NCBI GenBank assembly: GCA_002269645.1
Contig: NIVC01002897.1
Location: 1-64,000 of the forward strand
Source of the DNA: Macrostomum lignano
Lineage: Eukaryota
Direction of reading: 5' to 3'
DNA: 64,000 nt
In this document: positions 19,616 through 50,477 of the stretch, piece after piece
How the letters are laid out: every line of letters begins with the position of its first letter
How positions within the stretch are numbered: the first letter of the stretch is position 1
Made by a program: the position numbers and the translations under genes
Notes under the pieces: model-generated
What the model was told of the DNA's origin: nothing
The model's database searches: none
Seen by the model: the letters and a program-made list of their open reading frames with translations, nothing else

Positions 19616-19618
19616 CGC

Positions 19619-19732
<114 letters not shown>

Positions 19733-22180: not shown

Positions 22181-22970
22181 TCTAGCACCCCTAATACCCC
22201 ATCTAGCACCCCTAATACCCTATCTAGCACCCCTAATACCCATCTAGCACCCCTAATACCCCATCTAGCACCCTTAAAATTCCATCTAGCACTCCTAATA
22301 CCCCATCTAGCACCCCTAATACCCCATCTAGCACCCTTAAAATTCCATCTAGCACTCCTAATACCCCATCTAGCACTCCTAATACCCCATCTAGCACCCT
22401 TGATACCCTATCTAGCACCCTTAATACCCCATCTAGCACCCTTGATACCCCATCTAGCACCCCTAATACCCCATCTAGCACCCTAATACCCCATTTAGCA
22501 CTCCTAATACCCCATCTAGCACCCTTGATACCCCATCTAGCACTCCTAATACCCCATCTAGCACTCCTAATACCCCATCTAGCACTCCTAATACCCCATC
22601 TAGCACTCCTAATACCCCATCTAGCACCCCTAATACCCCATCTAGCACCCCTAATACCCCATTTAGCACTCCTAATACCCCATCTAGCACCCTTGATACC
22701 CCATCTAGCACTCCTAATACCCCATCTAGCACTCCTAATACCCCATCTAGCACCCCTAATACCCCATCTAGCACCCCTAATACCCCATTTAGCACTCCTA
22801 ATACCCCATCTAGCACCCTTGATACCCCATCTAGCACTCCTAATACCCCATCTAGCACCCTTGATACCCCATCTAGCACCTCTAATACCCCATCTAGCAC
22901 CCTTGATACCCCATCTAGTACCTCTAATACCCCATCTAGCACCCTTAATACCCCATTTAGCGTCCCTAAT
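22181..22970. repeat. 21-bp minisatellite (CCCCATCTAGCACCCCTAATA)n
   Basis: About 37 units. Confidence 0.95.
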
Positions 22971-23451
22971 ATCCCAGCATATAAAGAATTGATGTTTTAG
23001 CAAGCCATAACAATAATTTAAACCAGATACTGTAATGAAAAGACAATGATGTGGTCTACGATGATGATCAATACCAATATATTGGACAATACTCTACAAA
23101 AAACCAGAGCACAAACACACAGGATACAAGACCGCAGGGGCATTTTGAAGGCAACAATAATTATAAATTATGATAATACAAGAAAATACATTTTTTTAAA
23201 AATATACGCTTGATAAACAAAAAGCTACTTGATTAAATTTTTCGATAATAAAATTTTTCGATATTTTATTACACTTTATTTGACCTTGATATACTCGTAG
23301 CAAAGTGAAACGGCATTTGCATGTAAAGGCTGGATTTTTCCATTATCAACAGCGACAAAACTTATAATAGATGGTTCAAAACTGAAGCGACAAAAAAATA
23401 GGGATTCAGAGCGCAACAATAAAGCTGTAGCAGTGTGTGTTAAACTGGCAT

Positions 23452-23862
23452 TGGGGCGCCGAAATTGGGAATCGGCGCCAACATTAGGTTTTTGGCGCCG
23501 AAATTAGGATAAGGGTGCCAATATTGGGATTGGGGTGCAAATATTGGGATTGAGGCGCCAAAATTGGGATTGGGGTGCAAATATTGGGATTGAGGCGCCA
23601 AAATTGGGATTAGGGCGCCAAAATTAGGATTGGGGCGCCAAAATTGGGATTGGGGCGACAAAATTGGGATTAGGGCGCCAAAATTAGGATTGGGGCGCCA
23701 AAATTGGGATTGGGGCGACAAAATTGGGATTAGGGCGCCAAAATTAGGATTGGGGCGCCAAAATTGGGATTGGGGCGACAAAATTGGGATTAGGGCGCCA
23801 AAATTAGGATTGGGGCGCCAAAATTGGGATTGGTGCGACAAAATTAGGATTGGGGCGCCGAA
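23452..23862. repeat. 20-bp minisatellite (GGGGCGCCAAAATTGGGATT)n with 60-bp higher-order repeat
   Basis: About 20 units, starting ~90 nt past the Ago stop codon. Confidence 0.93.
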
Positions 23863-23952
23863 ATTTGTGATTTGTTTGGCGCGCACAGAAAGTGGGATGA
23901 ATTAAGGCGCTAAGCTAGAGATTTTAGGACTTGAAGTCGGTTCGAGAAGTTC

Positions 23953-26900
23953 CTACAAAAAGAACATGCTGTCGTCCCTCGAATAAGCAGGCTCAATCTT
24001 TTCGAGTCTTAGCGAGGCCGGATCCGTGGCGGCAGACTGGCGCGAGCTGACACTGCTAGCGTCGGGACTGGAGTCCTCGCCTTGCCAAGTTCGGGCTCTG
24101 AATGCGCACAGGTGAGCGTAGTACACTGGAGAGGGGATGCTCACCTGTAGAGATATGGGAACATGCTATATGTACATGTACACACACTGCATAGTAGAAA
24201 TATTCAGTATTGAAGTCGTCTGACTTTATTGAAAATCTCTTATTACATCGAACAATGTACTGAGGCAATTTCACAACCAGAACCTAGTCACATTCACAAC
24301 ACAACCTAGTCTCATTCACATAAAAAACTAGTCACATTCACAACACAATCCAGTCACATTCACAACACAACCTAGTCTCATTCACATAAAAAATTAGTCA
24401 CATTCACAACACAATCCAGTCACATTCACAACACAACCTAGTCTCATTCACAACTTAGTGACATTCACAACCTAGTCACATTCACAACACAACCTAGCCA
24501 CATTCATATAAAAAACTAGTCACATTAACAACACAACCTAGTCTCATTCACAACCTAGTCACATTAACAACACAACCTAGTCTCATTCACAACCTAGTCA
24601 CATTAACAACACAACCTAGTCTCATTCACAACCTAGTCACATTAACACAACCTAGTCTCATTCACAACCTAGTCACATTAACAACACAACCTAGTCTCAT
24701 TCACAACACAACCTAGTCTCATTCACAACACAACCTAGTCTCATTCACAACCTAGTCTCATTCACAACACAACCTAGTCTCATTCACAACCTAGTCTCAT
24801 TCACAACACAACCTAGTCACATTAACAACACAACCTAGTCTCATTCACAACCTAGTCACATTAACAACACAACCTAGTCTCATTAACAACACAACCTAGT
24901 CACATTAACAACACAACCTAGTCACATTAACAACACAACCTAGTCACATTAACAACACAGCCTAGTCACATTCACAACACTTTCACCGTACACTCACCGA
25001 TCTGGTGCAGCGCATGTACACGTGGCACAGGTAGTAGGTGAACAACTGCAGATCGTCAGAGCTCCACTTATTGTCATCCCACAGCACGTGGTACAGAGAC
25101 GGCTTGGAGGTGCCCTGGATGCCTTCATGGCTAAGCAGATAGAAATTGAACTCCCGTTTGTGCACTATGTCAGTGTCCACCACAGTGCCTGCCGGGCAAT
25201 TGCCGCTCTTGCCAACAGCATCCTGCCTACTAGCTGGGAACAAGCGAGTATGGTGCCGCTTGCCAACTATGATGAAGGTGATTCGAGGCTCGTACTCGTT
25301 GCCGGTCGCCATCTCCGTGCAAGCCTGCTGGATTGCGGCAACCTCGTGTCTGAGGACTTCGGTGAATTGGCCCTCTGAGACGCCGTCTCTGTAGAACATT
25401 ATGCTGGTAGGCTTAAAGCCGTTGCGCTTGTAGAACTTCAATAGCAGAGCTTTGACTGCGCCTTTCATATCGTCTATCACCTCCTTCACAGCGTTGGTCT
25501 CAGTGCCTTTGCGAGACACCTGACAGAGTTGAGAAGAGCGAAGAAGGTTTGCTGCTAGGTTTTGTGAAATTGCTTGTGTCTCCTGTCTCACCCTCATCTA
25601 TCCGTATAAAAGTGGGACTGTCACATTTTTTTGGTGACAGTCGAAATTGTGACACTGCTTGTCACGCTTGTGACAGTGATGTGACAGTCAGTTATTAATG
25701 TGACCGTCGATGTGACACTCAAACAAACTGTCACAGCTGTGACCGTCCATGTGACAGTGAAATATTGTCACCAGTGTGACCGTCGATATGACACTCAAAT
25801 GTGACACTAAAAAAAAACTGTCACTGCTGTGACCGTCCATGTGCCTCGTGTGTTTAGTTGTTTTAAGCAATGGTAAAAAACTAACAATTTGGTAGAGTAA
25901 TATTTCCGATGCATCATTTTTTCTATTAAACGTGGTCTAGTTATTAGCATGTTAATTACGTGCCTCAATTTCTGTGCATAATCATCAAGTCAAATAAGTA
26001 TTTCCACGTGTATTGTTATACACATCTGCAATACAATCCACTCCACTTATCCAGTCAAGCACGTACATGCACAATATTTCAGTAGCAAACTAATAAATCA
26101 ATCATGATCACTGGTTCACTGGCATCCCGCTTGTCTTTAGTCGTCCAACCCATCTCCTCATCCTCATCCTCTTCAATTCAAGCTCGTAATTGCTTGAAAG
26201 TTTTTTCCTACTCAAGTTGAGTCAAGTATAGGTGATGGAGGGTGAGTATACTCGTTCACTAGTTTGCTCATTCGAGTTAGAAATTGTAAATATAAATTTA
26301 ACGAAACACAGCAGATACACAGAAAATAAAGAGATAATACACAAAAATAGCAACTCGAGGAGGAACTTCAATGCGAATCTAGCAATCGAAAAATGTTTTA
26401 GGAAACAATGTTGTACAACTTGGGTTCACATGACAACACATCGACTGTCACACAAGAGACAGTTTTTCGACTGTCACATTTGAGTGTCACATCGACTGTC
26501 ACAGTGGTGACAGTTTCTTAGAGTGTCACATTTGAGTGTCACATCGACTGTCACAGCGGTGACAGTTTCTTAGAGTGTCACATTTGAGTGTCACATCGAC
26601 TGTCACAGCGGTGACAGTTTCTTCGTGTGACATTTGAGTGTCACATTTGAGTGTCACATCGACTGTCACAGTGGTGACAGTTTCTTAGTGTGACATTTGA
26701 GTGTCACATCGACTGTCACAGTGGTGACAGTTTCTTAGTGTGACATTTGAGTGTCACATCGACTGTCACAGTGGTGACAGTTTCTTAGTGTGACATTTGA
26801 GTGTCACATCGACTGTCACAGTGGTGACAGTTTCTTAGTGTGACATTTGAGTGTCACATCGACTGTCACAGCGGTGACAGTTTCTTAGAGTGTCACATTT

Positions 26901-29900
26901 GAGTGTCACATCGACTGTCACAGCGGTGACAGTTTCTTAGTGTGACATTTGAGTGTCACATCGACTGTCACAGTGGTGACAGTTTCTTAGTGTCACATTT
27001 GAGTGTCACATCGACTGTCACAGCGGTGACAGTTTCTTAGTGTCACATTTGAGTGTCACATCGACTGTCACAGTGGTGACAGTTTCTTAGAGTGTCACAT
27101 TTGAGTGTCACATCGACTGTCACAGCGGTGACAGTTTCTTAGTGTCACATTTGAGTGTCACATCGACTGTCACAGTGGTGACAGTTTCTTAGAGTGTCAC
27201 ATTTGAGTGTCACATCGACTGTCACAGCGGTGACAGTTCTTAGAGTGTCACATCGACTGTCACAGCGGTGACAGTTTCTTAGAGTGTCACATTTGAGTGT
27301 CACATCGACTGTCACACTTGTGACAGCTTATTTCACTGTCACATCGACGTTCACATTTGAGTGTCACATCAACGGTCACAGTGGTGACAGTTTATTTGAC
27401 TCACATTTGAGTGTCACAATGAAGGGTCACATGTGATACAGTCATTTGAGTGTCACAAAACTGTCACATAGTCAAAATGTGAGAGTCCCACTTTTATACG
27501 GGTAGTCTCTCCTGTCTTATTCTCATCTAGTCTCTCCTGTCTCACCCTCATCTAGTGTCTAATCTCACAATCATCTAGTCTCTCTAATCTCACTCTCATC
27601 TAGTCTCTCGTGTCTCACTCTCATCTAGTCTCTCCGTCTCACCCTCATCTAGTCTCTCCTGCCTCACTCTAATCTAGTCTCTGCTGTCTCCCCCTTATCT
27701 AGTCTCTCCTGTCTCATCTTCATCTAGTCTCTCCTGTCTCATCTTCATCTAGTCTCTCCTGTCTCACACCCTCCCTTCAAGCTGAATTCCTAACAAAGCA
27801 ACACCGATCCGTCCCCAATGCCTGACCTGCTCCCTAAACTCGGCCGAATATCGAGTAAAATTGACATCCATGGAGGCGACCACAGCAGCAATAGACTTTC
27901 GAATAGAATTGTCGCCAGTTGGCGCAGGGTGGGTGACGTCAGCTCCAAACACAATCATTGGCTCCTTGACGATGGCGCGACCTTCAGCGTTGAGATCTCG
28001 CGCCAGCTGGTCCAGACGCCAATTGATGCCGCCCAGCTTGCCGTTGATCTTCAACAGGATGTTGCCAACTGTCTGCGGAGACGGCGCCCGTGGGCCTTCA
28101 ACATTCTTGGACAGCACCGCCTGAGTAATGATGCCGTACTTGAGATCGCCTAGACTCTTAATAGTCTTATAAGACTCTTTGTCGAACGCGTTCACCACAA
28201 ACATTGCGAACTCAATTTTGTCCTTTTGAAACTCGCGAAACATGCGATCGATCAAGTCGTGATTGGGCCGGCCCTCCTTAACGTACTTGCAGTTGTCCTC
28301 GCGCAGCGGGATGCCGTTCTGGCCCGCTTGCTGCGTCAGCATATTGAAAAACGGCATATCGTTGCGAACCCGATCGTCCAGGTTGACGAAGGCCCATCTT
28401 TGCACCTGGAGAGATCGGCGATGAACTGTAAAAACGACTAAGTTGGTACAGGATTTTAACGCAACCCACCTTGACCTGATCTCGACCCATCATTCCCTGA
28501 TGAAAACGGTACCTAAGCCATTTGAAGCGCTTTATTTTCTGCGACTCTTGAAACGACTCAGGGACTGTAGAGTCGTATTTAAGCCGTGAGTTGCGTCTGA
28601 AGCGCATTTGGGCTGCTTGATTTATATCATTTTGACCCACTTTCAGAACCTTATAGTGTATCTACAATAAAAAAACGCTTTGAGAGTGCTTTCACTTTTG
28701 ATCGACCTTTTGTGGTTCAAACAAGTCCGTATTCCTCACCCTGCATAAGTAGTAGGAAAATGGTACGGTCTGGCCCACGTCGCTGATTGGCTGGCCAATC
28801 AGCGAGGGGGAGCCAATCAGCGAGGGGGGCCAATCAGCGGGGGGAGCCAATCAGCGAGGGGGAGCAAATCAGCGAGGGGGAGCCAATCAGCGAGGGGGAG
28901 CAAATCAGCGAGGGGGAGGCCCCGGAGGTGGGGCGGGGCAGGCCGGAGGTAAAGGTGGGACAAGCCAGAGGCGGGGGCAGGCCGAGGGAGGGGCAGGCCA
29001 AGGGTGGGGTCGGGCAGGCCGGATATAGCTAAAATAGCTAGGCATGTACATGTACGTACACTCTAGCGCGAGAGTCGGACGCCCCTCCAGACTACGGACG
29101 GACAGATTAAACAAGATCCAATCAATTACCTGTCCAGTCTCGAAAAACACGGCATTCCTGGCGTCCCACTTGCCGGGACCCCTGTCCAACTTGACGCTCT
29201 GGTTCTTGGCATAGCCGATAGCCGGACTGCCTAGCACTCGACCCCAGAGTTGCAGCATCCGGACGTCGATGTTGACCTTAAACTCTGCCAAGTAGCGACT
29301 CTTATTTAGTTCGAGCCGCTTGAGCCGATCTTCAATTTCGGCTTTTCGTTGCTCGGCCGGTACGGCCGCTTTGCGAATGATTGCGCTAACAATTTCACCT
29401 TCTTTGTCCGGCGGTTTCTGATAGGGCATCATTGTGCACAGCTCCACAGGTAGAAGGGTGTTTCGGTTGCTAGACACTTTAGCGCAAGGCATGTGCGGAT
29501 ACTGTAGATCTCTACCGTACTGTTTTTTAAAGTACTGCTGCACCGTTAGTGTGGAACCATCGTCCAGAGTAATCGTAGAAGCAGCTGGAGATCGCTTCAG
29601 GTCGAAGATGGTATGCTTGCGGGTGAAGTTGCGACCTTCTTTGGTCTTGTAGTGGCTGGCCTCAACCCGGCACATCTTCACCAGCTTGCCAAGTATGATT
29701 CGATCTTTATCTGACAGCTCTCGATTCCAAACATCATCTCGCCAGCGTTTACTTTTGCCAATTTCGTAGAGCAGATCGGCCAGGTTCTTGCTGGGATAGC
29801 AGGCCACCTGATAGTAAAGCAGGATAGTAGAGTGTAGATGAGGGATAGTAGAGTGTGGGTGAGGGATAGTAGAGTGTAGATGAGGGATAGTAGACTGTAG

Positions 29901-32689
29901 ATGAGGGATAGTAGACTGTAGATGAGGGATAGTAGACTGTAGATGAGGGATGGTAGAATGTAGATGAGGGAGGGATAGTGGGTACAGCCTAGTGGTTAGA
30001 GCATCATACTGAACCCCTAACTACTGAAAGGTCGGGGGGTTCGATTCTCGACCCACTCTCGGAACAGTTTGTGTCCTTGAGCAAGACACTTAACTCTGCA
30101 TTGCTTCAGTTCACCCAGCTGTAAAATGGGTGCCAGCATTAGCTGGGGTAATTGAGGGTGTGTGTGGCGACCCCCCAGTCCTTGGACTGAACAGCCGTAC
30201 GCAGCCTTCAGATGCGTCACGCAATAGCTGCGGCTGAGCTGTCGGTTGCACATCTGCCCATTATGATATTCATCAATTAAAATACAGCAGTATAATACAT
30301 GAGAGATAATATGATAGAAGAAGAGTAGACAGTAGAACAGTTGATTAGAAACAGTGGAGTAGATATCATATCAGTCACTAACTAACCTGGGTATTATCAA
30401 CATTGAGTCGCACAGACCACTGCGGTCTCAGGCTAGCAAACAGGCCCTGATGCATAACCCAGGGCAATTCGCCTTCGCGCTGACCCAACGGCACCGACCG
30501 TTCAAAGAACAGCGCCCTGGAGCCAATGGGCACCATAGACTTTTCAATAAATGTAGCTTTTAAAAGTACATCCACAACTCGGATAGCATCAATGGGTATG
30601 TCGGCGGTGCCCATCTCTGTAGTCAAATAGGTCGAAATGTCGCCAAAATGACGGGTAGGCGTGCGAGATTCGACTACGAGGACCGAATACTCGTTCTCGC
30701 CCTCGCCGCTATCTTTGGGCAAGAGTACCCGCTTTTTGAAAGTGCTTTCGCTGGAGACGCCAGGCAGTTTGTCCAAGAAATAGGCCACCCGTCGGCCGTC
30801 ATAGATGTACCTGAGATTGATTTGGCGTTGTTTAAAAGTATCTTTTAAGTATCTATATCTTTATCACACAAATTCATTAACATTGCCTGGCTATTTCGGG
30901 GCACAGATACTAGAATAACTAGATGGGCCACTCAGCACATTTGCGTGCAAACTACTTTCGGTTCAGTAGTTAAAATAATTTAAACAGAAGTATTTTACTG
31001 TATTTTAAAGCCAAGGCTCAACTATTGGCTTTTAACCCCGCCCTCCCCCAGCTTAAACCCTCCAGCCGCGCCTTTCCACATTCACCCCCTCAGCGGTGGA
31101 CTGGCTAATGTACATTATGGCTGAATCAATTAGCAAGTTGTTTACTCGCCTGCAAGCTTGGGCTTCTAAACTTATCAAAGTCCCCCCGCCCCGCCCAAAT
31201 TTTTATTGCCCTTCTCGGAATTCCAGTCTAAAGCTGCCACGTACATTTCAGTGGACTGGCCAATGTACATTATGGCTGAATCAATTAGCAAGTTGTTTAC
31301 TCGCTTGCAAGCTTGGGCTTCTAAACTTATCAAAGTCCCCCCGCCCCGCCCAAATTTTTATTGCCCTTCTCGGAATTCCAGTCTAAAGCTGCCACGTACA
31401 TTTCAGTGGACTGGCCAATGTACATTATGGCTGAATCAATTAGCAAGTTGTTTACTCGCTTGCAAGCTTGGGCTTCTAAACTTATCAAAGTCCCCCCGCC
31501 CCGCTCAAATTTTTATTGCCTTTCTCGGGATTCCAGTCTAAAGCTGCCACGTACACTTCAGTGGACTGGCCAATGTACATGATGGCTGAACCAATTAGCA
31601 AGTTGTTTACGCCTGCAAGCTTGCACTTCAAAACTTATCAAATTCATTTCAGCCGACCCTTTATTTTTATAAAATAGCTTATGTATTCTTCTTTGCTACT
31701 GAACTGGAAGTAGGAAGCTGTTTTACTAAGTATATATGCCTGAGTGGCCCATCTAGTTTATTTATCAAAGTCAAAGGCCGCGCGCTGTACACCCAGTGTG
31801 AGCATGCGCATGAATGCGTGTCTGCGTACAGTATTGGCTCACCTGTACTGGTTGATCTTCGGGAAGAACTTCCCCATGAAAGCGCGCATCACAGCTTCGC
31901 ACTCTGTTCGTCGCAGTTCAAATGTTTTGCCTTTCTGCCTGACGTTCTGCGTTCTCTTATTGCAGTCTTGTATTTCAAAATCGTACATAAACACGCGCAG
32001 ATCGTCGGAAAACTTGAAATTAAAATGATTAGCATATAGGGCTATTTTTCGACCTTTAGTTCCGCCGCGATCCGGCCTGGACGGCAGCTGCCGGCGACGC
32101 TGATCGCTCACGGCGGACACGGTGACCGGGAGGAACTCCGTGGCTGGTAGTGCCGCCGCGCCTTCAACTGTGCCAGTTGCGCCTTCAACTTCAAGGCTAA
32201 GCTCGGATACTTCGCGTTCGATTTGCGATGTTTCCGCTTCTGGACGACTTGGCGGTGGCTGTTGAGGCTGCTGGCGCCATGCCTGTTGCTTCTTCTGCTG
32301 CTGCGGCTGTTGCTGCCGCTGTTGCTGTTGCGATGGTTGTTGCGGCTGTTGCTGTTGCGGTGGTTGCTGCGGCTGTTGTGGTTGCTGCTGCGGCTGCTGC
32401 TGCGGCTGTTGCTGTTGCGGTGGTTGCTGCCGCTGTTGCGGTTGCTGCTGCGGCTGCTGCTGCTGCGGTGGTTGCTGCTGCGGTGGTTGCTGCGGCTGTT
32501 GCTGCTGCGGTTGCTGCTGCCGCTGTTGCTGTTGCGGTGGTTGCTGCCGCTGTTGCGGTTGCTGCTGCGGCTGCTGCTGCCGCTGTTGCTGCTGCGGTTG
32601 CTGCTGCGGCTGCTGCTGCCGCTGTTGCTGCTGCGGTGGTTGCTGCTGCGGTGGTTGCTGCGGCTGTTGCTGCTGCGGTGGTTGCTGCG

Positions 32690-32729
<40 letters not shown>

Positions 32730-32816
32730 TGGGAAACCAGGAGCTTCCTGCGAAGGGCTGCCCTGATTGCCGCCGCGACCTCGGCCACGTCCGCGAGCTT
32801 TAGATTTAGCCGGCAT
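23953..32816 (-). CDS. AGO: Argonaute (AGO clade, divergent/flatworm-type), 6 coding exons, 1122 aa
   Basis: Exons 32816-31843, 30810-30387, 29807-29130, 28405-27827, 25519-24998, 24144-23953. All are GT-AG with phases 2,0,0,0,0, totalling 3369 nt and open throughout. Domains: N ([11 protein letters not shown]), PAZ ([27 protein letters not shown]), MID ([22 protein letters not shown]), PIWI ([38 protein letters not shown]). Confidence 0.96.
24275..24979. repeat. Compound 16-21-bp minisatellite (CACAACCTAGTCTCATTCACAA)n, Ago intron 5
   Basis: Fills most of the intron. Confidence 0.92.
25601..27502. mobile_element. Non-autonomous Tc1/mariner-type DNA transposon (1.9 kb) in Ago intron 4
   Basis: 29-bp TIRs TCCGTATAAAAGTGGGACTGTCACATTTT / AAAATGTGAGAGTCCCACTTTTATACGGG (2 mismatches). 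TA is duplicated at 25599-25600 and 27503-27504, inside a CATCTAGTC unit of the flanking minisatellite. The interior carries ~50-bp GTCAC/GTGAC-rich arrays and no transposase ORF. Confidence 0.88.
27505..27765. repeat. 25-bp minisatellite (ATCTAGTCTCTCCTGTCTCACCCTC)n
   Basis: About 10 units; one unit is left on the other side of the transposon at ~25576-25600. Confidence 0.9.
28783..28940 (+). repeat. 18-19-bp array of CCAAT-box units plus GC box, Ago intron 3
   Basis: CTGATTGGCTGGCCAATCAG palindrome, then ~7 units (GCCAATCAGCGAGGGGGGA), then GGGGCGGGGC at ~28930. Confidence 0.85.
29820..29975. repeat. 21-bp minisatellite (GAGGGATAGTAGAGTGTAGAT)n, Ago intron 2
   Basis: About 7 units, abutting SINE copy 2. 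Confidence 0.9.
29979..30263 (+). mobile_element. CORE-like SINE copy 2 (antisense in Ago intron 2)
   Basis: Near-identical to 9519-9800 across the B box, CORE-like domain and 3' part. Confidence 0.85.
31095..31645. repeat. 155-bp tandem satellite (~3.5 copies), Ago intron 1
   Basis: GTGGACTGGCCAATGTACAT recurs at ~31096, 31251, 31406 and 31561; units are highly identical. Confidence 0.92.
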
Positions 32817-35254
32817 TTTTTGCCAATAGCATTAACAGAATATTTTTTAGTGTGGAAGGAAAAGAAATAATAGCTACTTGGAACTCTAATAAAACAATGC
32901 AATAGCATTCCATGCTTCGATTTATTGTTTATAGTCTATAATATACTTTCTGCCTCAGAAGGTGAAGGTTCCAATCCAGTTTGTGAGTTGGATATTTGAT
33001 GACAAATAATTTTGTTAATTTTGCCAAAAATGACTGACCACAATTATTAGCAGCAATGACAAAATATAATTATCTAACATTCAAAAAGCTCTACTTTGGT
33101 CAAATTATAAACCTTTCTTTCTGTTAAAATTACTTTTTTAAAAAAACCATAGTCTGGATCATACTTAGTGCATGCTAGAATGCTGTGAATCAATGCACGC
33201 TGACACTAAATAAATGCATGCCAATACCATTTGTAGTTAGGACAATAAAGGACCTTTTTGCAGTTTTTACTATGTGACATTCAATTATATTATAATTAAA
33301 CTAATGATACAACCAATATGTACAATGTCCTACTAACAAACTGTTGATTTCTTTTCAATTATTTACTTTTATTTTACTTAATACTTTCTGAAAAACCACT
33401 CCTCTAATTTAGCCTTTATCATTAAAACTTTTTGTGGCAAATAACTTTGAATGTTCATCTATCATATGCCTTACACTGATATACCATAATGCACATTGCA
33501 TGCCATTTGTGCATTCTCACAACTACACTTTCTTTCAGTTACATGCTGATATTTTCAAATGCATACCAAAAAATAAGAAAAACTATAACTAAAGAGGCCT
33601 AATAAATGTACCTTTTAAATAACTAATTGTTTAGTAAAAAATTAAAATATTATATAATTAAATAATAAATGATATTTAAAACCATAGCCATTGGCATAGA
33701 ATTCTTAAAACCTATTGACTTAAAAATCAATGATATAAATAAAGAAAACTATTTTTTCTACTATTCATCATACTTTTATATATTTATACTATAGCTATGC
33801 TAATACAGATAAAAAACAAAGGAAAATCAAATTAAATAGTTTTATACTCATTCTATTCCATACTTAATCTTACTTACAAAATAACAAACAATCCATTGGG
33901 CCTAAGCTATTTTTTTGTTTAGCTAGCATATGTGAAACTCCTATTGAATATATTTTGAATATTTAATAGGTCTTTAGTTTATACCATGCAAGCCAGCTAG
34001 GCCTATTTAAATTCAAAACACACTGCCTAAATAATTTATATTTTCGTTTCTTATTTCTTCAGTCTCTCTACGAGGAGCGTTGGGTAGATAAAGCAAAGAA
34101 GACCTAGCTCCATGGCATATGCATATGCATTCGGTCGGACACAACTTACCACCTTAAAAGACGAAGCTGGCAACTGATTTAAAACAGCAAAAGCGAAAAC
34201 CGAAAATAAAGATTTTCGCTTTTGAATTCAATTTTTAACTTCTATTTTGTAACCTATAAATGTAAGTGAAATAAAAATTTGCATATTGTAAAGCTTTTTA
34301 ACAGCGTAAGACAAGTATGGTTAAAACTTTTCTTAAAATAGTTCAAAACAAAACTTGTTTAGGCTCCGGTTGAGCTCCCGAACCCAGTCCAATTTCTGGA
34401 CACAAACACCTACGAAACAGCATCGAAGATTTATTTTATACTTACAATTTATTTTATCTGCATTCTCGTGTCAATGCCAAAAATTTTTAAGCCTCGACAG
34501 TGGGCAAAGCCTCGATCAACTGATGGACAATTAATATCAATATCCGGGAGCTGGCATTATGGATGGACACCCTGTTTCGCTGATCAAGCCTGTACAATGA
34601 AACTTGACAATGTCAGAAAACCTCAACTGTTGGACATCCTCAGCTAGTCTCTCTCAAACATTCCATCATCACCCGGACGCCGTCGGCACCTTTCAGCAGA
34701 CGACACCAAGCGCGTACACATGTGTACTACGAACGTATATTACAATAAAAACAAAGGAAAACTAGCGCCATGTATGATAGCTACTACTCATGTACACTCG
34801 ACGACATGTGGACGAAATTGTTTTTGTTCGTATTCTACTCTTTCTTGACTCATGCGGACTTGGGTAATATTTAATTAAATTACACTTCCAAATCTCTCTC
34901 GGGTGTCCATAGTCACACGGTTTCGTCTTTTAAAGGTGTCGCCAACCAGGGTTGTCGGAACCGGGGCATGGGGGAGGCTGGAGCCTCCCTTCCTCAAGCG
35001 ACAAGCCTTCTTTAATTTCCTTTCTTTAGCTCTGCCCGGCCCATCACCGCTTGGTTGTATAGGCCCCGTCACCCTCAATGGGGTATGTAGACACTCGTAG
35101 TTCATGTTGTTCTCAATCTTATTCCACTACACTACAGCTTTTTTCTAATGTGCTTAAGCCTAGTAATATTAGTGTTTAGCACTTTTACTTTGGCGTCTCT
35201 GATACTAATTTCGAGTCTGCCGCAATCCCAAGACTTAAACCGCTGCTGGCGCTG

Positions 35255-36836
35255 TTGTTGTTGTTGTTGTTGTTGTTAGTGCTGAGACGTTTTCCACCTA
35301 GCCCGGTACCAGCCCCAGTACATGTACGCCAGGGCTGCATCCGGATCTTCATTTAGCCAGCTCAATTCGGACGCTCCGTACTGCCGGCGCGTTCTCTCCG
35401 TGGCCGGGCAGGAGCAGATCACGTGTTCAACCGTGTCGGCCTCCTCTCCACAGGCCGGGCAGGTGTCTTTATCGGTCTCCCGATCCTATGGCGATAAGCC
35501 TCCAGCTCCAGCGAATGTCCGGTGCGGAGCCTCCGGAAGCTGACACCTTCCGCCCCGACATTGAGTCCTGGGGTGCCTCGCCATGCCACTTCTCCCGCAC
35601 GTGCGGATCGTGCGCTCGTGCCTCCAGCGTTATAGTAGTCGCGCTCCTCCTCCCTCGCGTGGGCATACAGCCTCCTCCTGACACTGGCCAGCACACCGGC
35701 GCCCTCCTGGGCAAAGGCGGCAGCCGCGCCCGCAGCCTCGTCCGCTGCCTCGTTGCCAGTCAGGCCGCAGTGCACGGGGACGCAGCACAAGGTCACCTTC
35801 CTACTCTGGGCACATATGTCTTCCAAGAGCTGCTGTGCCCTAAGCGCCAGCGGGTTGCGGCCTGTGCCCTTGATGGCCATGAGCCCACTCTGGCTGTCCG
35901 ACACCAAAAGAGCCGATCTCTTCACTGATCATGGGCCTGTAGCCACTCCAGCCCGCGGGTAATCGCCTTGAGCTCCGCTTGCAGCGAAGAGGCCGGCAAG
36001 CCAGCCGGTTCCTTGATGATGATGGGGGCCGCTCTCTGCTCCCGCGGCTCATCTGTCTTCCAGATCACCACTCCGCTGCCTCCTCCCAGCTCCTGCACCG
36101 ATCCGTCAGAGTAGATGGTGACGTCAGGCTTTTGACACGCCTCACTTTTGCGTTCCCCGGCAAGCTGCAGATTCTCCGCATCGCTGGATTTCCTGGTGTC
36201 CGCCTCGCACACCATGATCTTGGCCTTGGCTCGCCAGTCGCTCCAGGGCGCTCTGCTACTGGCGTCGGGAATGCGGCTGATCGTGTCTAAACTGGCGGCC
36301 GCTAGGAAAGCTCCGGCCTTCGCGCGCCATCCCTTCCGAGCCAGGCACTCATTTTAGCGCCGCAGGCACTCATTTTAGCGCCGCAGGCACTCATTTTAGC
36401 GCTGCAGGCACTCATTTTACCACCGCAGGCACTCATTTTAGCGCCGCAGGTACTCATTTTAGCGCCGCAGGTACTCATTTTAGCGCCGCAGGTACTCATT
36501 TTAGCGCCGCAGGTACTCATTTTAGCGCCGCAGGCACTCATTTTAACGCCGCAGGCACTCATTTTAGCGCCGCAGGCACTCATTTTAACGCCGCAGGCAC
36601 TCATTTTAGCGCCGCAGGTACTCATTTTAGCGCCGCAGGCACTCATTTTAGCGCCGCAGGCACTCATTTTAGCGCCGCAGGCACTCATTTTAGCGCCGCA
36701 GGCACTCATTTTAGAGTCTCTGCCTTGGTGCTTCTTCCGCCAACAGCCTCCTGGGGGAGCCGGCGGGAAGCCCGAGCCATCGATCAAGGCGGGCCCCCCA
36801 GTTAGCCCCACACAGGCCACGGAGGTCGACAAGCCC
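35255..36836 (-). mobile_element. 5'-truncated non-LTR retrotransposon (RNase H-containing, I-group-like) with 10-bp TSD
   Basis: RNase H motifs IYSDGS, QAELKAI, VSDSQS, HCGLTGNEAAD; RLRTGH; CPAC-x8-H-x4-C knuckle. TAA stop at 35278-35276 is followed directly by a (CAA)n tail. Perfect TSD GCTGGCGCTG at 35245-35254 and 36837-36846. Several -1 frameshifts and one 0.37-kb minisatellite insertion. Confidence 0.92.
36342..36714. repeat. 21-bp minisatellite (CAGGCACTCATTTTAGCGCCG)n inserted inside the LINE
   Basis: About 18 units; reverse complement of the 37102-37548 array. Confidence 0.95.
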
Positions 36837-36928
36837 GCTGGCGCTGCAATTAAAAATCACTAAAATGCCGTCAGATAAAAAATTAAAGAGACAGCGCCAA
36901 GAGGAACTGAAGGAGGCAGCCAAGAGAT

Positions 36929-37698
36929 AAGTGGCGTAGGCAAGGGGGATAAGGGGATGTATCCCCTGTGGGGTTTTGGGGGTCTGGTGTGGGAGTGAAA
37001 TGAAAATGAAAAAAATTAGCAGGTAAAAAAGAGAAACAAAGTTAACAAATGGTCTAATCCAAAAGATACTGATCTAAAAGAATAGCTATATAATATAGGA
37101 CGGCGCTAAAATGAGTGCCTGCGGCGCTAAAATGAGTACCTGCGGCGCTAAAATGAGTGCCTGCGGCGCTAAAATGAATGCCTGCGGCGCTAAAATGAGT
37201 GCCTGCGGCGCTAAAATGAGTACCTGCGGCGCTAAAATGATTACCTGGGGCGCTAAAATGAGTGCCTGCGGCGCTAAAATGAGTGCCTGCGGCGCTAAAA
37301 TGAGTGCCTGCGGCGCTAAAATGAGTGTCTGCGGCGCTAAAATGAGTGTCTGCGGCGCTAAAATGAATGCCCGCAGCGCTAAAATGAGTGCCCGCAGCGC
37401 TAAAATGAGTGTCTGCGGCGCTAAAATGAATGCCCGCAGCGCTAAAATGAGTGCCTGCGGCGCTAAAATGAGTGCCTGCGGCGCTAAAATGAATGCCCGC
37501 AGCGCTAAAATGAGTGCCTGCGGCGCTAAAATGAATGCCTGCGGCGCCAAAAAACTTTGTAGTACTCATACTTGTAGAACTATTAGGCAGGACAGTGGAT
37601 GGTACTTGTAATTTTTATTGAAGTTACCTTACGCAATACTAATAAGCAGTAGTCTCACCAGTTGTATACCCCCGTGAAAAGTTCTGACTACGCTTCTG
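36929..37698. mobile_element. Degenerate hAT-type MITE (CAGTGGCGTAG-like TIRs) containing a 21-bp array
   Basis: Left AAGTGGCGTAG..GGGGATGTATCCCC, right GTATACCCC..CTACGCTTCTG. Flanks CAAGAGAT / CAGGGTAT match at 5/8. Internal array (GCGGCGCTAAAATGAGTGCCT)n at 37102-37548. Confidence 0.5.
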
Positions 37699-39032
37699 CA
37701 GGGTATCCAGAAAATGAACTGATTGGTCTTTCCCTTTGCAATTTTCATTCATTCGGGATATTTACTAAATAAATTGATAGTGCAGTACAGTTGCTCAATG
37801 TTTGAATCAGTTGAAAATTCGAGAATTTTCAGACTTTTGGCCACTTTCAACACGGAATTGAATATTGGCCTTGAGGTTGGCTCATGTTCTTGAATTCCGT
37901 GTGCCTGCGTTGCTTTGCTCCGTTCCGCCGCAACACAGGCCAAGACAGAACCCAAGACAGAATTGATTTAATTACATTAGGTACCAGTCCCATAAAGCAT
38001 TTCACACTGTACCAAAAAGCTCCTCACAATTAGGATAATCTACTGGTACACAAATGTGCATGAAATCACAATGTAAACAAAAATTTGACATGACACAAAG
38101 TTTGATAAAATGAAAAAATAGAATATCAAGATATTATTTTTGCTATTAAATTTATTATTATTAGTTCTTCCGCAATTTTCAGTTTCCGGGGCAACAGCAA
38201 ACAAAGCAAACAAAAATTATAAAGAAGCATTGCTCGACAGTTATAAACCTGATTAAGCGGCCATTGAACAAGAAAAGGATATTTTGTGTTGACGATCGCA
38301 GTCTCGAGACCGCACTACTGGCAGTAGGACGACGTATATTTAACGCGTAAAAGTTATGAGAACTTATTGAATGCCCTTCAAAAAATAATTTAGTAAGAGT
38401 TCTTCAAAGCCACTGTTTTTTGAGAATAAAAGTTTTGAATTTTTTCTCTTTTGGGACTTTCCAAACGCTAGAAGACCTAGCTTGTATATAGATTGCACAA
38501 ACACACAAGCAAAGCTAATATAATGTTGAAGAGCAAACAAATAAAACTGTCAACATAACCATGTCGCAAGATTTATTAATTGATTGCACGATAACAAATC
38601 AGCTGTATTGATTCTGTCAATAGATCTAAAGTATATTATGAAAGAATGGGAGAGATTCACTAAACAAAAAAACAGGATAATTTTGTGTGTGCTCTTTTGA
38701 AAGATTTATTAAAAATACGCCTGCAAAAACACGGATGAACAAGAAAAGCCGTAGATTTCAGAAAGCTTTTATTACTAAACAAATTAAATAATAACTGAAA
38801 AAATAGCTATAATATGTGACGAGTAAAGATACCAGTAAATTTTGCGCGGAAAAACAGCTGGTCCACAAGTGCACTGTAGTAAAACAAAAAGTTATTAAAA
38901 AAATTTATCTAACCAAAAAAATTTAAACTACAAACTAACAAAAGATTTGAATAAACTGTAGGCCTGAATATTGCACAAACTTCTATCACACTTTTCGCTT
39001 GAAACCTATTTGAGTCCGGAAACTTGTGTCCA

Positions 39033-39535
39033 GGGACAGAGTGAAAAGGGAGTGACGGGGGGGACAGAGCGACAAGGGAGTGACGCGGGGACAGAGTGAC
39101 AAGGGAGTGACGCGGGGACAGAGTGACAAGGGAGTGACGCGGGGACAGAGTGACAAGGGAGTGACGCGGGGACAGAGTGACAAGGGAGTGACGCGGGGAC
39201 AGAGTGACAAGGGAGTGATACGGGGACAGAGTGACAAGGGAGTGACGCGGGGACAGAGTGACAAGGGAGTGATACGGGGACAGAGTGACAAGGGAGTGAC
39301 GTGGGGACAGAGTGACAAGGGAGTGACGTGGGGACAGAGTGACAAGGGAGTGACGGGGACAGAGTGACAAGGGAGTGACGGGGACAGAGTGACAAGGGAG
39401 TGACGGGGACAGAATGACAAGGGAGTGAGGAGGACAGAGTGACAAGGGAGTGACGGGGACAGAGTGACAAGGGAGTGAGGAGGACAGAGTGACAAGGGAG
39501 TGACGCGGAGACAGAGTGACAAGGGAGTGACGGAA
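39033..39535. repeat. 26-bp minisatellite (GGGGACAGAGTGACAAGGGAGTGACG)n, block 1
   Basis: About 19 units. Confidence 0.95.
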
Positions 39536-40274
39536 ACGGAGTGATAATAGAGTGGCGGGGGCAGATTGGAAGTGGGTTAAAATGATCGTAAACAACTGTG
39601 GTGCAACACTTTGACAACCTCCAAAGTCTCAGAATAAGTTTAACTTTTTGGAACAAACGTTGCTTAGTTGTAAAAATATTTTTTTAAACGGTATAACAAA
39701 CTTGAAGCTGGCAGCTGTGAAAGAATAGAAAAATTTTGGAACTTCAGATAACTATATAATAAATAGTATATGTTACTCAAGGATAATAATAACTAAAAGG
39801 TTGCATTGTTTCTCAGAAGTTGAAAATAAAAGCGAAAACAGATATAAAGGCAAATAAGGCAGTAGTACTATTAGTAATAGAAAAGCGTACAAGCTTCGCT
39901 TTGCCATATTATTAATGGAATAATTTCCTTGTCCACGATGACGAGATTTTACACTTCAGACGCTAAACTGCCTACTGATAATGAAACATTAGTAGCATCA
40001 GTGGGACAGCTTGATAGAATATTTCGACAGCAGGGCAGAAGTTAATCAAACGATAAAAATCTATTAATAAAGGCCGTTTACAACAATAAACCAGCTGATA
40101 ACAAAAAAAATGAAATCAGGATTAGCGGCAGATCGATAAGCTGGGTTAGCCGGCAGCATGGGACAACTTAAGTAGATTAGGATGTGAAAATGTTGTTTAA
40201 TAAAATTTGAAGGCTGGTTTTAGGCTCTAAACGGTGGTTTGCGTTCTGATTATACTTAAATGGTTCCTTGTAAT

Positions 40275-41460: not shown

Positions 41461-50477
<9,017 letters not shown>

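What the first reader, a model, noticed from the sequence alone, without database searches (positions are those of the whole stretch)
32250..32816. Argonaute N-terminus combines a PIWI-like RG box with a ~160-aa Gln/Pro tandem-repeat (prion-like) domain
Seen: [16 protein letters not shown] is followed by modules such as [18 protein letters not shown] and QQRQQPP, encoded by recombining CAG/CAA/CCG repeats and in frame with the N domain. Established: RG repeats in PIWI proteins are symmetrically dimethylated by PRMT5 and bound by Tudor proteins, and Drosophila Ago2 (the antiviral siRNA slicer) has a length-polymorphic Gln-rich N-terminus. Inference: a convergent siRNA-type Ago that may be recruited to germ granules (chromatoid bodies) through both Tudor binding and phase separation. 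This is the best candidate in the window for an undescribed small-RNA effector.
Basis: partly seen in the sequence, partly recalled or inferred. Interest (0 to 1): 0.75.

Follow-up and report, generated by a model that had tools for sequence, protein, structure and literature searches.

The report
Flatworm Argonaute with Ago2-like disordered tail
The repeat is real and codes for the disordered, glutamine-rich front end of an Argonaute gene of the flatworm Macrostomum lignano that is already in the public databases. This front end looks like the one long known from insect and crustacean Argonaute-2, so it is a new example of a known design.

Summary
Window 32253..32816 on the minus strand encodes MPAKSKA(RG)4G followed by a 160-aa tract that is 69% Gln and 23% Pro. 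It lies in the first exon of a clean 6-exon, 1122-aa Argonaute gene (ArgoN, PAZ, L2, MID, Piwi; DEDH residues present).

The organism is Macrostomum lignano. The protein belongs to the AGO clade, not the PIWI clade, and groups with the flatworm-specific Argonautes (FLAgo).

The gene is not undescribed. GenBank PAA90227.1 already carries the RG box and Q/P tract, and ALD16265.1 ("Argonaute 1") is a truncated entry for it.

The tail is very probably translated:
- No in-frame ATG lies between M1 and the start of the N domain.
- A second genomic copy differs by exactly 81 nt (three 27-nt units) and stays in frame.
- A transcript contig from a 74%-identical ortholog also carries an in-frame Gln-rich stretch.

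The architecture is a basic head with an RG box plus basic Gln-rich repeats (pI 11.6). It matches the N-terminal disordered region of arthropod Argonaute-2. N-terminal RG clusters are common among AGO-clade relatives (17 of 111), so "PIWI-like" is not specific.

Methylation, Tudor binding, granule localisation and prion-like behaviour remain untested. The 23% proline and near absence of aromatic residues argue against classic prion behaviour.

A recurrent AW[G/Q/R] motif shared with arthropod Ago2 tails is the only mildly new point. Interest is modest.

The parts
23953..32816 (-). Whole Argonaute gene: 6 coding exons, 1122 aa, Macrostomum lignano FLAgo-type AGO-clade protein
   Evidence: All five introns are GT..AG and the frame is continuous. 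Pfam on the spliced protein finds ArgoN 256-408, PAZ 510-596, ArgoL2 619-665, ArgoMid (weak) and Piwi 760-1078. The splice junctions match NCBI PAA90227.1.
31843..32816 (-). Exon 1 (974 nt): the N-terminal extension (aa 1-243) plus the first 81 aa of the N domain; donor GTGAGC
32832..32834 (-). In-frame TAA stop six codons upstream of the ATG; the ATG sits in an AAAAAATG context
   Evidence: The NCBI model in the sister locus starts 12 nt upstream of the ATG (YWQK-M).
32733..32816 (-). Basic head, aa 1-28: [28 protein letters not shown] (pI 12.0)
32772..32795 (-). (RG)4 box, aa 8-15, preceded by A and followed by G; a (G/A)R-type candidate arginine-methylation motif
   Evidence: 0 of 200,000 shuffles contain it and the codons are heterogeneous. 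It is conserved in the second genomic copy.
32253..32732 (-). Q/P tandem-repeat region, aa 29-188 (160 aa; 68.8% Q, 23.1% P, 5% R; pI 12.0; no acidic residue)
   Evidence: It is 81 nt longer than in the sister locus L002.
32253..32294 (-). [14 protein letters not shown], aa 175-188: holds the only Trp and only Ala of the Q/P region, side by side (AW[G/R] motif)
   Evidence: Adjacency by shuffling has P=0.006. The ortholog has KQQQAWGHQKPQP twice. The motif recurs in arthropod Ago2 tails.
32088..32252 (-). Acidic linker, aa 189-243 (pI 4.4): [24 protein letters not shown]...SDQRRRQ. Partly conserved in the ortholog.
31845..32087 (-). Start of the Argonaute N domain (aa 244-324, [22 protein letters not shown]...). 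The alignment to human AGO2 begins here.
30387..30810 (-). Exon 2 (rest of the N domain and linker 1)
29130..29807 (-). Exon 3 (PAZ and linker 2)
27827..28405 (-). Exon 4 (MID and start of PIWI; GGINW motif; catalytic D848)
24998..25519 (-). Exon 5 (PIWI; E898, D930, H1016; the TSKP motif)
23953..24144 (-). Exon 6 (C-terminus, ending ...DDSMFFL then the stop)

Best explanation
SHOWN. The region is the 5' part of exon 1 of the Macrostomum lignano flatworm-specific Argonaute (FLAgo; an AGO-clade protein with the catalytic DEDH residues conserved). It encodes a 243-aa N-terminal extension with four parts:
1. A basic head with an A(RG)4G box.
2. A 160-aa Gln/Pro tandem repeat that is strongly basic and has almost no hydrophobic residues.
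3. A KKQQAWR motif.
4. A short acidic linker into the N domain.
The repeat changes length in whole 27-nt units between genome copies and keeps the reading frame.

INFERRED. The extension is an intrinsically disordered tail of the type known from arthropod siRNA-class Argonaute-2. That type is basic, Gln-rich, repetitive and fast-evolving.

The most likely mechanism follows Drosophila Ago2. The Arg/Lys residues and the RG box bind RNA electrostatically. Together with multivalent Gln-rich contacts they concentrate the protein with RNA in reversible condensates. This would modulate small-RNA loading or target engagement rather than the catalytic cycle itself.

The RG box is additionally a plausible substrate of an arginine methyltransferase. 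Methylation would switch binding of Tudor-type partners.

The structural identification is about 0.9 likely. The condensate/RNA-binding mode is about 0.4. RG methylation with Tudor binding is about 0.3.
For: Gene model and domains.

Organism and database entries.

AGO clade, not PIWI clade, with DEDH aligned.

FLAgo grouping:
- Best hits are Mesocestoides, Echinococcus and Paragonimus FLAgos.
- A neighbour-joining tree supports the group in 195 of 200 bootstraps.
- The GGINW and TSKP motifs and the C-terminal MFFL are present (motifs from PMC8191739).

Translation of the tail:
- An upstream in-frame TAA is present, and the only other Met residues in exon 1 are at aa 277, 310 and 314, inside the N domain.
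- NCBI model PAA90227.1 includes the tail.
- The sister locus L002 is collinear at 97-98% identity. Its repeat differs by gaps of 63, 21 and 3 nt, a net 81 nt, all multiples of 3. That is 16.2 versus 13.3 copies of the 27-nt unit.
- The intronless ortholog contig L001 is open in the Gln-rich frame up to its 5' end. One other frame of that contig has a stop and the third is also open.

Ago2-like properties:
- pI is 11.6 for aa 1-243 and 12.0 for aa 1-188, with 7 hydrophobic residues in 188 aa. Arthropod Ago2 disordered regions have pI 11.5 +/- 0.99 (PMC12276012).
- Of 111 complete relatives, 56 have extensions of at least 100 aa, 14 are at least 20% Gln, and 17 have an RG cluster in the first 40 aa. 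These include named arthropod Ago2 proteins.
- Artemia Ago2 starts MGGKGRGRGRGQ... and is Q-rich.
- The AW[GQR] motif is in 14 of 72 tails versus 2.8 +/- 1.6 expected.

Mechanistic precedent:
- The DmAgo2 disordered region is needed for condensates, which depend on Arg and RNA (PMC12276012).
- The DmAgo2 N-terminal region forms amyloid-like aggregates in vitro (PMC10114355).
- GRR length is polymorphic (PMC3002974, PMC4978909).
- RG methylation occurs in AGO-clade proteins (PMC6381116, PMC11317149, PMC8270938).
Against: - No expression, localisation, methylation or small-RNA data exist for this protein in anything I could search.
- The parasitic-flatworm FLAgos in the hit list lack a Q-rich tail. 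The tail is therefore not a family-wide requirement.
- The M. lignano tail has far fewer aromatic 'sticker' residues (F28 and W180 only) and far more proline than DmAgo2, so its phase behaviour may differ.
- The window is full of tandem repeats, and another gene here carries a Q19 tract. Neutral expansion is therefore credible.
- The AlphaFold model shows no secondary structure and pLDDT of 19-29 over aa 1-262. The whole model is poor (mean pLDDT 36.5, 5-sequence alignment), so this is weak support for disorder.
- My tree does not resolve whether FLAgos are closer to Ago2-type or miRNA-type Argonautes.
Confidence: 0.6

Rival explanations
1. Neutral by-product. The Q/P tract is a coding microsatellite/minisatellite that expanded by slippage and unequal exchange in a very repeat-prone genome. 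It is merely tolerated because it sits in a disordered tail, and it contributes nothing specific to Argonaute function.
For: - The repeat is heavily rearranged between two 97-98% identical copies.
- The window is crowded with tandem arrays in introns and intergenic DNA.
- A kinesin gene in the window carries a Q19 tract.
- Parasitic FLAgos lack the tract.
- The DmAgo2 GRRs are dispensable for RISC assembly in vitro, and copy-number variation gives no developmental defect (PMC3002974).
Against: - The frame is kept in both copies, and every gap is a multiple of 3.
- An ortholog at 74% identity has a different but still Q-rich, in-frame tract with the AW motif.
- The tract has no acidic residue and a pI of 12, matching the conserved basic character of arthropod Ago2 disordered regions (PMC12276012).
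- Basic Q-rich tails recur in many relatives.
Confidence: 0.25
2. The RG box is symmetrically dimethylated by PRMT5 and bound by Tudor proteins as in PIWI proteins. Together with a prion-like Q/P domain it recruits this Argonaute to germ granules or chromatoid bodies.
For: - A(RG)4G fits the (G/A)R motif class that is methylated in Aub and Ago3 and read by Tudor domains (PMC8249470).
- AGO-clade proteins with RG-rich N-termini are methylated too: AtAGO2 by PRMT5 with Tudor-SN binding (PMC6381116), and CSR-1A (PMC8270938).
- FLAgos of schistosomes are germline- and stem-cell-enriched and bind transposon siRNAs, according to the review text in PMC5594548 and PMC8191739.
- The motif is conserved in both genome copies and is not a DNA repeat.
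Against: - Nothing here tests methylation, Tudor binding or localisation.
- There are only four RG dipeptides, against 15 in CSR-1A.
- In CSR-1A the methylated RG motifs are not required for P-granule localisation (PMC8270938).
- The Q/P tract is 23% proline with no Asn, Tyr or Gly, which is unlike yeast-type prion domains.
- M. lignano keeps bona fide PIWI proteins for the granule-linked piRNA pathway (PMC4604429).
Confidence: 0.2
3. The tail is not part of the protein. Translation starts downstream, or upstream exons splice past the repeat, as in the UniProt models A0A1I8ITF4 and A0A1I8ITZ2 and in GenBank ALD16265.1.
For: - P0001 and P0007 join an upstream RNase H ORF directly to ...[13 protein letters not shown], skipping aa 1-236.
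- P0008 starts at the internal MYDFEIQ.
- Drosophila ago2 and C. elegans csr-1 both make short isoforms lacking the tail (PMC3002974, PMC8270938).
Against: - P0001 and P0007 are chimeras. They also run into the first exon of the downstream Bicaudal-C gene.
- P0008 starts at Met277, which removes the first strands of the N domain that align to human AGO2 from aa 244. It is best read as a transcript assembly broken at the repeat.
- No in-frame ATG exists between M1 and aa 277.
- The ortholog transcript carries the Q-rich frame.
- The NCBI model includes the tail.
Confidence: 0.05

Closest known systems
Arthropod Argonaute-2 N-terminal glutamine-rich repeat region / basic disordered region (Drosophila Ago2 GRR1/GRR2; PMC3002974, PMC4978909, PMC12276012, PMC10114355)
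   Same: - It lies directly N-terminal to the N domain of a non-miRNA AGO-clade Argonaute with intact catalytic residues.
- It is long (243 aa versus 397 aa in D. melanogaster), Gln-rich, tandemly repetitive and strongly basic (pI 11.6 versus 11.5 +/- 0.99).
- The short units resemble GRR1 (QQQQPQQPP versus QQLQQP).
- Copy number differs between gene copies.
- It has a Lys-rich or RG head ([16 protein letters not shown] versus Artemia MGGKGRGRGRGQ and Cloeon [16 protein letters not shown]).
- AW[G/Q/R] motifs occur in the repeats.
   Different: - The core protein groups with flatworm FLAgos, not inside arthropod Ago2, and orthology is unresolved.
- Composition is more extreme (69% Q and 23% P in the tract) and has almost no Gly, Tyr or His, residues that matter in DmAgo2 condensates.
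- There is one AW motif instead of one per repeat.
- No functional data exist.
Flatworm-specific Argonautes (FLAgo; SmAgo2/SjAgo2, Echinococcus and Mesocestoides Ago; PMC5594548, PMC8191739)
   Same: - These are the best sequence relatives (35-40% identity) and form a common clade with it (195/200).
- The GGINW and TSKP motifs and the C-terminal MFFL are shared.
- The MID domain is only weakly detected by Pfam, as reported for the clade.
   Different: - The parasitic members in my hit list have no tail or a short, non-Q-rich one (P0003 has 1 aa, P0004 has 42 aa, P0009 has 131 aa at 3% Q).
- Motif 2 reads TSKPSL rather than TSKPxH.
- Motif 3 reads YAHLCA rather than YSHLAA or YAHLAA.
PIWI-clade N-terminal (G/A)R motifs (Aub, Ago3, MIWI; PMC8249470, PMC10681313)
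   Same: A short run of alternating Arg and Gly/Ala lies within the first 20 residues of a disordered N-terminus.
   Different: The protein is not PIWI clade. PIWI tails are not Gln-rich repeats. Methylation and Tudor binding are untested here.
RG-rich N-terminal extensions of AGO/WAGO-clade proteins (Arabidopsis AGO2 and AGO1, C. elegans CSR-1A, Toxoplasma Ago; PMC6381116, PMC11317149, PMC8270938, PMC2877743)
   Same: An AGO-clade protein with a disordered, first-exon-encoded RG region. In those proteins the region is arginine-methylated and tunes stability, partner binding or small-RNA choice.
   Different: Those tails have many more RG/GR or RGG repeats and lack a long Gln/Pro tract.

Membership tests
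Argonaute, AGO clade | N, PAZ, MID and PIWI domain order | tested here: met
   Pfam on the spliced model finds ArgoN 256-408, PAZ 510-596, ArgoL2 619-665, ArgoMid 678-733 (23 bits, below the cut-off) and Piwi 760-1078.
Argonaute, AGO clade | Closer to AGO than to PIWI proteins | tested here: met
   Human AGO1-4 score E of about 1e-134 to 1e-138 over nearly the full length. Siwi, Piwi-A and PIWIL1/2 score 1e-31 to 1e-38.
Argonaute, AGO clade | Catalytic DEDH tetrad | tested here: met
   D848 (GADVTHP), E898 (KEVIDDM), D930 (YRDGVSEG) and H1016 (LSHEGIQG) align to the human AGO2 residues. Slicing activity itself was not tested.
PIWI clade | Sequence affinity to PIWI proteins and PIWI-type motifs (TVTPTH, YAHKLA) | tested here: not met
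   The window protein has TSKPSL and YAHLCA, and its PIWI-clade hits are about 100 orders of magnitude weaker than its AGO hits (motifs from PMC8191739).
Flatworm-specific Argonautes (FLAgo) | Clusters with the flatworm-only Ago clade | tested here: met
   Neighbour-joining tree on 820 columns: the window protein and its Macrostomum ortholog group with the Echinococcus, Mesocestoides and Paragonimus FLAgos and P0026 in 195 of 200 bootstraps. The method is rough.
Flatworm-specific Argonautes (FLAgo) | Motif 1: Asn-Trp at the end of MID | tested here: met
   [12 protein letters not shown] is present. NW occurs in only 24 of 178 sequences on hand, and those whose source organism I looked up are all flatworms.
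Flatworm-specific Argonautes (FLAgo) | Motif 2: TSKPxH | tested here: inconclusive
   The window protein has TSKPSL. The diagnostic Lys is present but the His is replaced by Leu.
Flatworm-specific Argonautes (FLAgo) | Motif 3: the sextet around the catalytic-region His (YSHLAA or YAHLAA type) | tested here: inconclusive
   The window protein has YAHLCA, which is neither the canonical YAHLVA nor the FLAgo form.
Arthropod Ago2-type glutamine-rich basic N-terminal disordered region | Long, Gln-rich, tandemly repeated stretch directly N-terminal to the N domain | tested here: met
   The extension is 243 aa at 47% Q overall. The tract is 160 aa at 69% Q, with a 27-nt period and 16.2 copies.
Arthropod Ago2-type glutamine-rich basic N-terminal disordered region | Strongly basic pI despite variable sequence | tested here: met
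   pI is 11.63 (aa 1-243) and 12.0 (aa 1-188). Arthropod values are 11.5 +/- 0.99 (PMC12276012).
Arthropod Ago2-type glutamine-rich basic N-terminal disordered region | Repeat-number variation between alleles or copies | tested here: met
   The window has 16.2 units and sister locus L002 has 13.3, a net in-frame difference of 81 nt. Strain-level polymorphism was not tested.
Arthropod Ago2-type glutamine-rich basic N-terminal disordered region | Orthology of the carrier protein with arthropod Ago2 | tested here: inconclusive
   The FLAgo group sits apart from the arthropod Ago2 group and the deep branching is unresolved. The literature proposes FLAgo may be a fast-evolving siRNA-class Ago (PMC8191739).
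Arthropod Ago2-type glutamine-rich basic N-terminal disordered region | RNA-dependent condensate formation | not testable with these tools
   This needs recombinant protein or live imaging.
sDMA/Tudor-binding (G/A)R motif | Cluster of (G/A)R repeats in a disordered N-terminus | tested here: met
   [10 protein letters not shown] at aa 7-16.
sDMA/Tudor-binding (G/A)R motif | Symmetric dimethylation by PRMT5 and recognition by a Tudor domain | not testable with these tools
   This needs mass spectrometry or an anti-sDMA blot, plus binding assays.
Prion-like domain | Q/N-rich low-complexity stretch of at least 60 aa | tested here: met
   160 aa at 69% Q.
Prion-like domain | Few prolines and charged residues, with enrichment of N, Y, G and S as in yeast prion domains (from general knowledge of PAPA/PLAAC-type predictors) | tested here: not met
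   The tract is 23% Pro and 6% Arg+Lys. It has no Asn, Tyr or Gly and one Ser.
Prion-like domain | PLAAC/PAPA score; amyloid or heritable aggregation | not tested
   These predictors are not available here, and aggregation needs experiment.

The most novel reading that the evidence does not exclude
The three-part tail is an old, shared module of non-miRNA (siRNA-class) Argonautes of protostomes. The parts are a Lys/RG head, basic Gln-rich repeats, and Trp motifs of the form AW[G/Q/R]. The early-branching flatworm Macrostomum would have retained this module and parasitic flatworms would have lost it. That would tie the enigmatic FLAgo clade to the Ago2 lineage. It would also define AW[G/R] as a conserved short linear motif, perhaps WG/GW-like, with a partner still to be found.
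Probability: 0.25. Interest if true: 0.55.

Novelty: new member of a known kind. Interest (0 to 1): 0.3.

Why it matters
If the tail works like the arthropod Ago2 disordered region, Macrostomum would provide a non-arthropod system for a long-open question: what the glutamine-rich Argonaute tails are for. Macrostomum is transgenic-tractable, transparent, and has both germline and somatic stem cells.

It would also bear on the origin of the flatworm-specific Argonautes. These are thought to stand in for the lost PIWI pathway in parasitic flatworms, which makes them of interest for parasite biology.

As it stands the finding is an annotation-level refinement. The public UniProt and WormBase-type models and the GenBank 'Argonaute 1' entry miss or mis-join this N-terminus. 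Only PAA90227.1 has it.

Tried and rejected
- Word-indexed homolog searches with the N-domain half and with the tail plus N domain returned nothing, not even the known M. lignano entries. The index was swamped, so I could not survey tails in other Macrostomum species.
- A PDB sequence search with exon 1 gave no hit at E<=1, as expected for a disordered region.
- Pfam finds nothing in aa 1-255.
- AlphaFold2 on a 5-sequence alignment gave a poor model (mean pLDDT 36.5). The tail is the least confident part and has no secondary structure, but I do not use the model as strong evidence and did not run a fold search on it.
- A first tree attempt with Biopython's distance calculator timed out. I replaced it with a numpy p-distance neighbour-joining tree.
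- Literature searches for the locus tag Mlig013602 and for run SRR28338165 found nothing. The species of the ortholog contig L001 is therefore unknown.
- BLASTP of the tail against P0070 masks the low-complexity head. The similarity [22 protein letters not shown] versus [23 protein letters not shown] is by eye only.
- I considered and rejected a PIWI-clade identity.
- I considered and rejected the plus-strand Leu-rich and Ala/Val-rich ORFs 32223..32870 and 32228..32803 as genes. They are frame artefacts of the repeat.
- I considered and rejected the RNase H-Ago fusion models.

Full report
**1. What is in the sequence.** The finding lies on the minus strand. An ORF at 31839..32816 (-) opens with [28 protein letters not shown] and runs straight into a Gln/Pro tract. 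By my limits the tract is aa 29-188, window 32253..32732. It is exactly 160 residues: 110 Gln, 37 Pro, 8 Arg, 2 Lys, 1 Ser, 1 Ala and 1 Trp. It is built from [22 protein letters not shown] and QQRQQPP modules and written with CAG (76), CAA (34), CCG (24) and CCA (12). Tandem Repeats Finder reports a 27-nt period, 16.2 copies and 76% matches.

The (RG)4 box (aa 8-15, 32772..32795) never arose in 200,000 shuffles of the protein. It uses mixed synonymous codons (CGC GGA CGT GGC CGA GGT CGC GGC). It is therefore a protein-level repeat and not a DNA microsatellite. All three frames of the Q/P repeat are open, so the open frame alone is not evidence of coding. The frame is set by unique coding sequence on both sides.

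**2. The gene.** Following the frame through GT..AG junctions gives a six-exon gene:

| Exon | Window coordinates (minus strand) |
|---|---|
| 1 | 32816..31843 |
| 2 | 30810..30387 |
| 3 | 29807..29130 |
| 4 | 28405..27827 |
| 5 | 25519..24998 |
| 6 | 24144..23953 |

It encodes 1122 aa. Pfam on the spliced product finds a full-length ArgoN (aa 256-408), PAZ, ArgoL2, a weak ArgoMid and Piwi (aa 760-1078), and nothing in aa 1-255. Against solved structures the core matches human AGO1-4 at E of about 1e-134 to 1e-138. PIWI-clade proteins score only 1e-31 to 1e-38. The catalytic residues D848, E898, D930 and H1016 align.

**3. Whose gene it is.** The closest database proteins are from Macrostomum lignano (97% identity). 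The cluster holds four entries:
- PAA90227.1 (Mlig013602.g1, 1099 aa, 'partial') starts [20 protein letters not shown] and contains the Q/P tract.
- ALD16265.1, 'Argonaute 1', 846 aa, starts at the internal Met277.
- Two UniProt models (A0A1I8ITF4, A0A1I8ITZ2) fuse an upstream RNase H ORF to ...[12 protein letters not shown] and run on into the first exon of the downstream Bicaudal-C gene. These are chimeras.

The gene is therefore already public, and one public model already contains the feature. The papers that mention M. lignano Argonautes do not describe this N-terminus, and three other targeted searches found nothing on it.

**4. Which Argonaute.** After the Macrostomum sequences, the best relatives in a full HMMER scan of 1.84 billion representatives are flatworm proteins, followed by arthropod Argonaute-2 and canonical Agos. 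The flatworm hits include Mesocestoides 'argonaute-2', Paragonimus and Echinococcus 'eIF2C', and the canonical-type Cichlidogyrus 'argonaute 1'.

The window protein carries the motifs proposed as diagnostic for flatworm-specific Argonautes. GGINW is present. TSKP is present, although it reads TSKPSL rather than TSKPxH. It also shares their C-terminal MFFL (PMC8191739). A rough neighbour-joining tree groups it with the FLAgos in 195 of 200 bootstraps. Whether FLAgos are nearer to the Ago2 type or the miRNA type is not resolved by my tree. The literature suggests they may be fast-evolving siRNA-class genes (PMC8191739).

**5. Is the tail translated?** Four lines of evidence say yes.
- A TAA lies in frame six codons upstream of the ATG. 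The only other Met residues in exon 1 are at aa 277, 310 and 314, inside the N domain, whose alignment to human AGO2 starts at aa 244. A protein with an intact N domain must therefore start at M1 or further upstream.
- Locus L002 (GCA_002269645.1) is a collinear copy of window 42333..13388 at 97-98% identity. Its exon 1 flanks are nearly identical, but the repeat is reshuffled with gaps of 63, 21 and 3 nt. The net difference is 81 nt, or three 27-nt units (13.3 versus 16.2 copies), and the frame is kept.
- A 3172-nt intronless contig from a sequencing run (L001) encodes a 74-76% identical ortholog. It is open to its 5' end in the frame reading [71 protein letters not shown]... One alternative frame of that contig has a stop and the other is also open. 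Its species is unknown and its extreme N-terminus is missing.
- The NCBI model includes the tail.

**6. What kind of tail.** Residues 1-188 have pI 12.0 and a net charge of +15, with only 7 hydrophobic residues. Residues 189-243 form an acidic linker (pI 4.4). The whole extension has pI 11.6. This matches the description of the arthropod Ago2 disordered region as basic (pI 11.5 +/- 0.99), Gln/Arg-rich, repetitive and fast-evolving (PMC12276012, PMC3002974, PMC4978909).

I surveyed 111 complete representative relatives:

| Feature of the N-terminal extension | Count out of 111 |
|---|---|
| At least 100 aa long | 56 |
| At least 20% Gln | 14 |
| At least three RG/GR dipeptides in the first 40 residues | 17 |

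Named examples are the Ago2 proteins of Artemia (MGGKGRGRGRGQHPQEQQ..., both features), Cloeon ([16 protein letters not shown]), Onthophagus, Dendroctonus, Coccinella, Halictus, Dinoponera and Chelonus. So neither the RG head nor the Gln-rich repeats are unusual for this part of the family, and the RG box is not a PIWI hallmark. Parasitic-flatworm FLAgos in the list lack a Q-rich tail.

**7. A motif noticed on the way.** The only Trp and the only Ala of the 160-aa tract are adjacent ([14 protein letters not shown]). The shuffle probability of that adjacency is 0.006. The ortholog has KQQQAWGHQKPQP twice. AW[G/Q/R] occurs in 14 of 72 relatives' tails, against 2.8 +/- 1.6 expected by shuffling (maximum 8 in 2000 shuffles) and in only 2 of 72 folded cores. 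Of 106 tail Trp residues, 34 follow Ala.

Most carriers are arthropod Ago2 proteins, so the counts are not phylogenetically independent. In DmAgo2, Trp-to-Gly changes weaken condensation only slightly, whereas Arg/Lys are essential (PMC12276012). The motif may be a weak 'sticker' or a WG/GW-like contact site. This is speculation.

**8. How it most likely works.**
- *Shown:* the anatomy, the AGO-clade/FLAgo identity, the in-frame repeat-unit turnover, and the Ago2-like physicochemistry.
- *Inferred:* the tail is disordered. The AlphaFold model has no secondary structure and pLDDT of 19-29 over aa 1-262, but the whole model is poor.
- *Inferred by analogy with DmAgo2:* the tail binds RNA through Arg/Lys and, with multivalent Gln contacts, promotes reversible RNA-dependent condensation that modulates loading or targeting.
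- *Inferred from other AGO-clade proteins:* the RG box is a plausible arginine-methylation site that switches Tudor-type partners (PMC6381116, PMC8270938, PMC8249470).

Classic prion or amyloid behaviour is less likely than in DmAgo2 because of the 23% proline and the lack of Asn, Tyr and Gly. Recruitment to chromatoid bodies is possible but has no support here, and in CSR-1A the RG motifs are not needed for granule localisation (PMC8270938).

The main rival is neutral repeat expansion in a very repeat-rich genome.

**9. Verdict.** This is a new member of a known kind of feature in a gene that is already public. The practical yield is a corrected N-terminus relative to three of the four public models, plus a cross-phylum motif worth a look. 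Interest is 0.3.

Noticed in passing
window 32253..32294 (-); L001 88..200; relatives P0020, P0055, P0084, P0096, P0110, P0122, P0135, P0145, P0156: A recurrent AW[G/Q/R] motif sits inside the Gln-rich N-terminal tails of this flatworm Ago and of many arthropod Ago2 proteins. It is in 14 of 72 tails against 2.8 expected by shuffling and is rare in the folded cores. I found no description of it in the papers read.
   Followed up: partly
window 35419..36215 (-) and P0001/P0007: RNase H-type ORFs of a retroelement lie about 2.6 kb upstream of the Ago start and are also present in sister locus L002. UniProt models A0A1I8ITF4 and A0A1I8ITZ2 wrongly fuse them to the Ago and to the next gene downstream. 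The two ORFs alone gave no Pfam hit at E<=0.001, although the precomputed annotation of P0001 lists PF00075.
   Followed up: partly
window 12887..16935 (-): A Bicaudal-C homolog lies immediately downstream of the Ago on the same strand. It has a BICC1 first KH domain at 16552..16935 and KH plus SAM domains in the 681-aa ORF 12887..14932. Bicaudal-C is a germline/RNA-regulation gene.
   Followed up: partly
window 29097..29129 (-), just after the exon 3 donor: Read-through of the exon 3 donor gives ...ETGQ|[10 protein letters not shown]. This resembles the true start of exon 4 ([10 protein letters not shown]). It may be a relic of a duplicated or alternative exon start, or it may be chance.
   Followed up: no
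window 31096..31642 (intron 1) and 29822..29971 (intron 2): A 155-bp tandem repeat (3.5 copies, 96% matches) fills half of intron 1. A roughly 150-bp block in intron 2 matches L002 at four places (12967-13116, 13135-13284, 13387-13536, and the start of the 13513-17052 collinear match), so it looks multi-copy there. Intronic arrays therefore appear to vary between gene copies too.
   Followed up: partly
window 36342..36714 and 37101..37552: Two arrays of a 21-nt unit (17.8 and 21.5 copies) have consensus units that are reverse complements of each other. They form an inverted pair about 390 bp apart, next to the retroelement ORFs. This may be part of a mobile element.
   Followed up: no
window 3364..6846 (+), 41744..43147 (-), 52042..52875 (+), 57838..58455 (+): Other gene fragments in the window: a kinesin motor protein with a run of about 20 glutamines near its C-terminal part, the C-terminal half of a protein kinase domain running into an intronic LSGLSSV repeat, a mitochondrial carrier, and the N-terminal part of a cytochrome P450.
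   Followed up: partly
window 17447..19782, 22233..23003, 38909..41291, 43357..45492, 53883..54676, 55206..57938, 58497..59381: Very long minisatellite arrays give spurious ORFs of hundreds of codons in several frames. The locus is unusually repeat-dense, which bears on the neutral-expansion rival for the Q/P tract.
   Followed up: no
P0070 (EukProt transcriptome protein, 1119 aa): A distant Argonaute from an unnamed eukaryote transcriptome starts [22 protein letters not shown]. This is almost the same head as the window protein's [23 protein letters not shown], although the cores are only 34% identical.
   Followed up: partly
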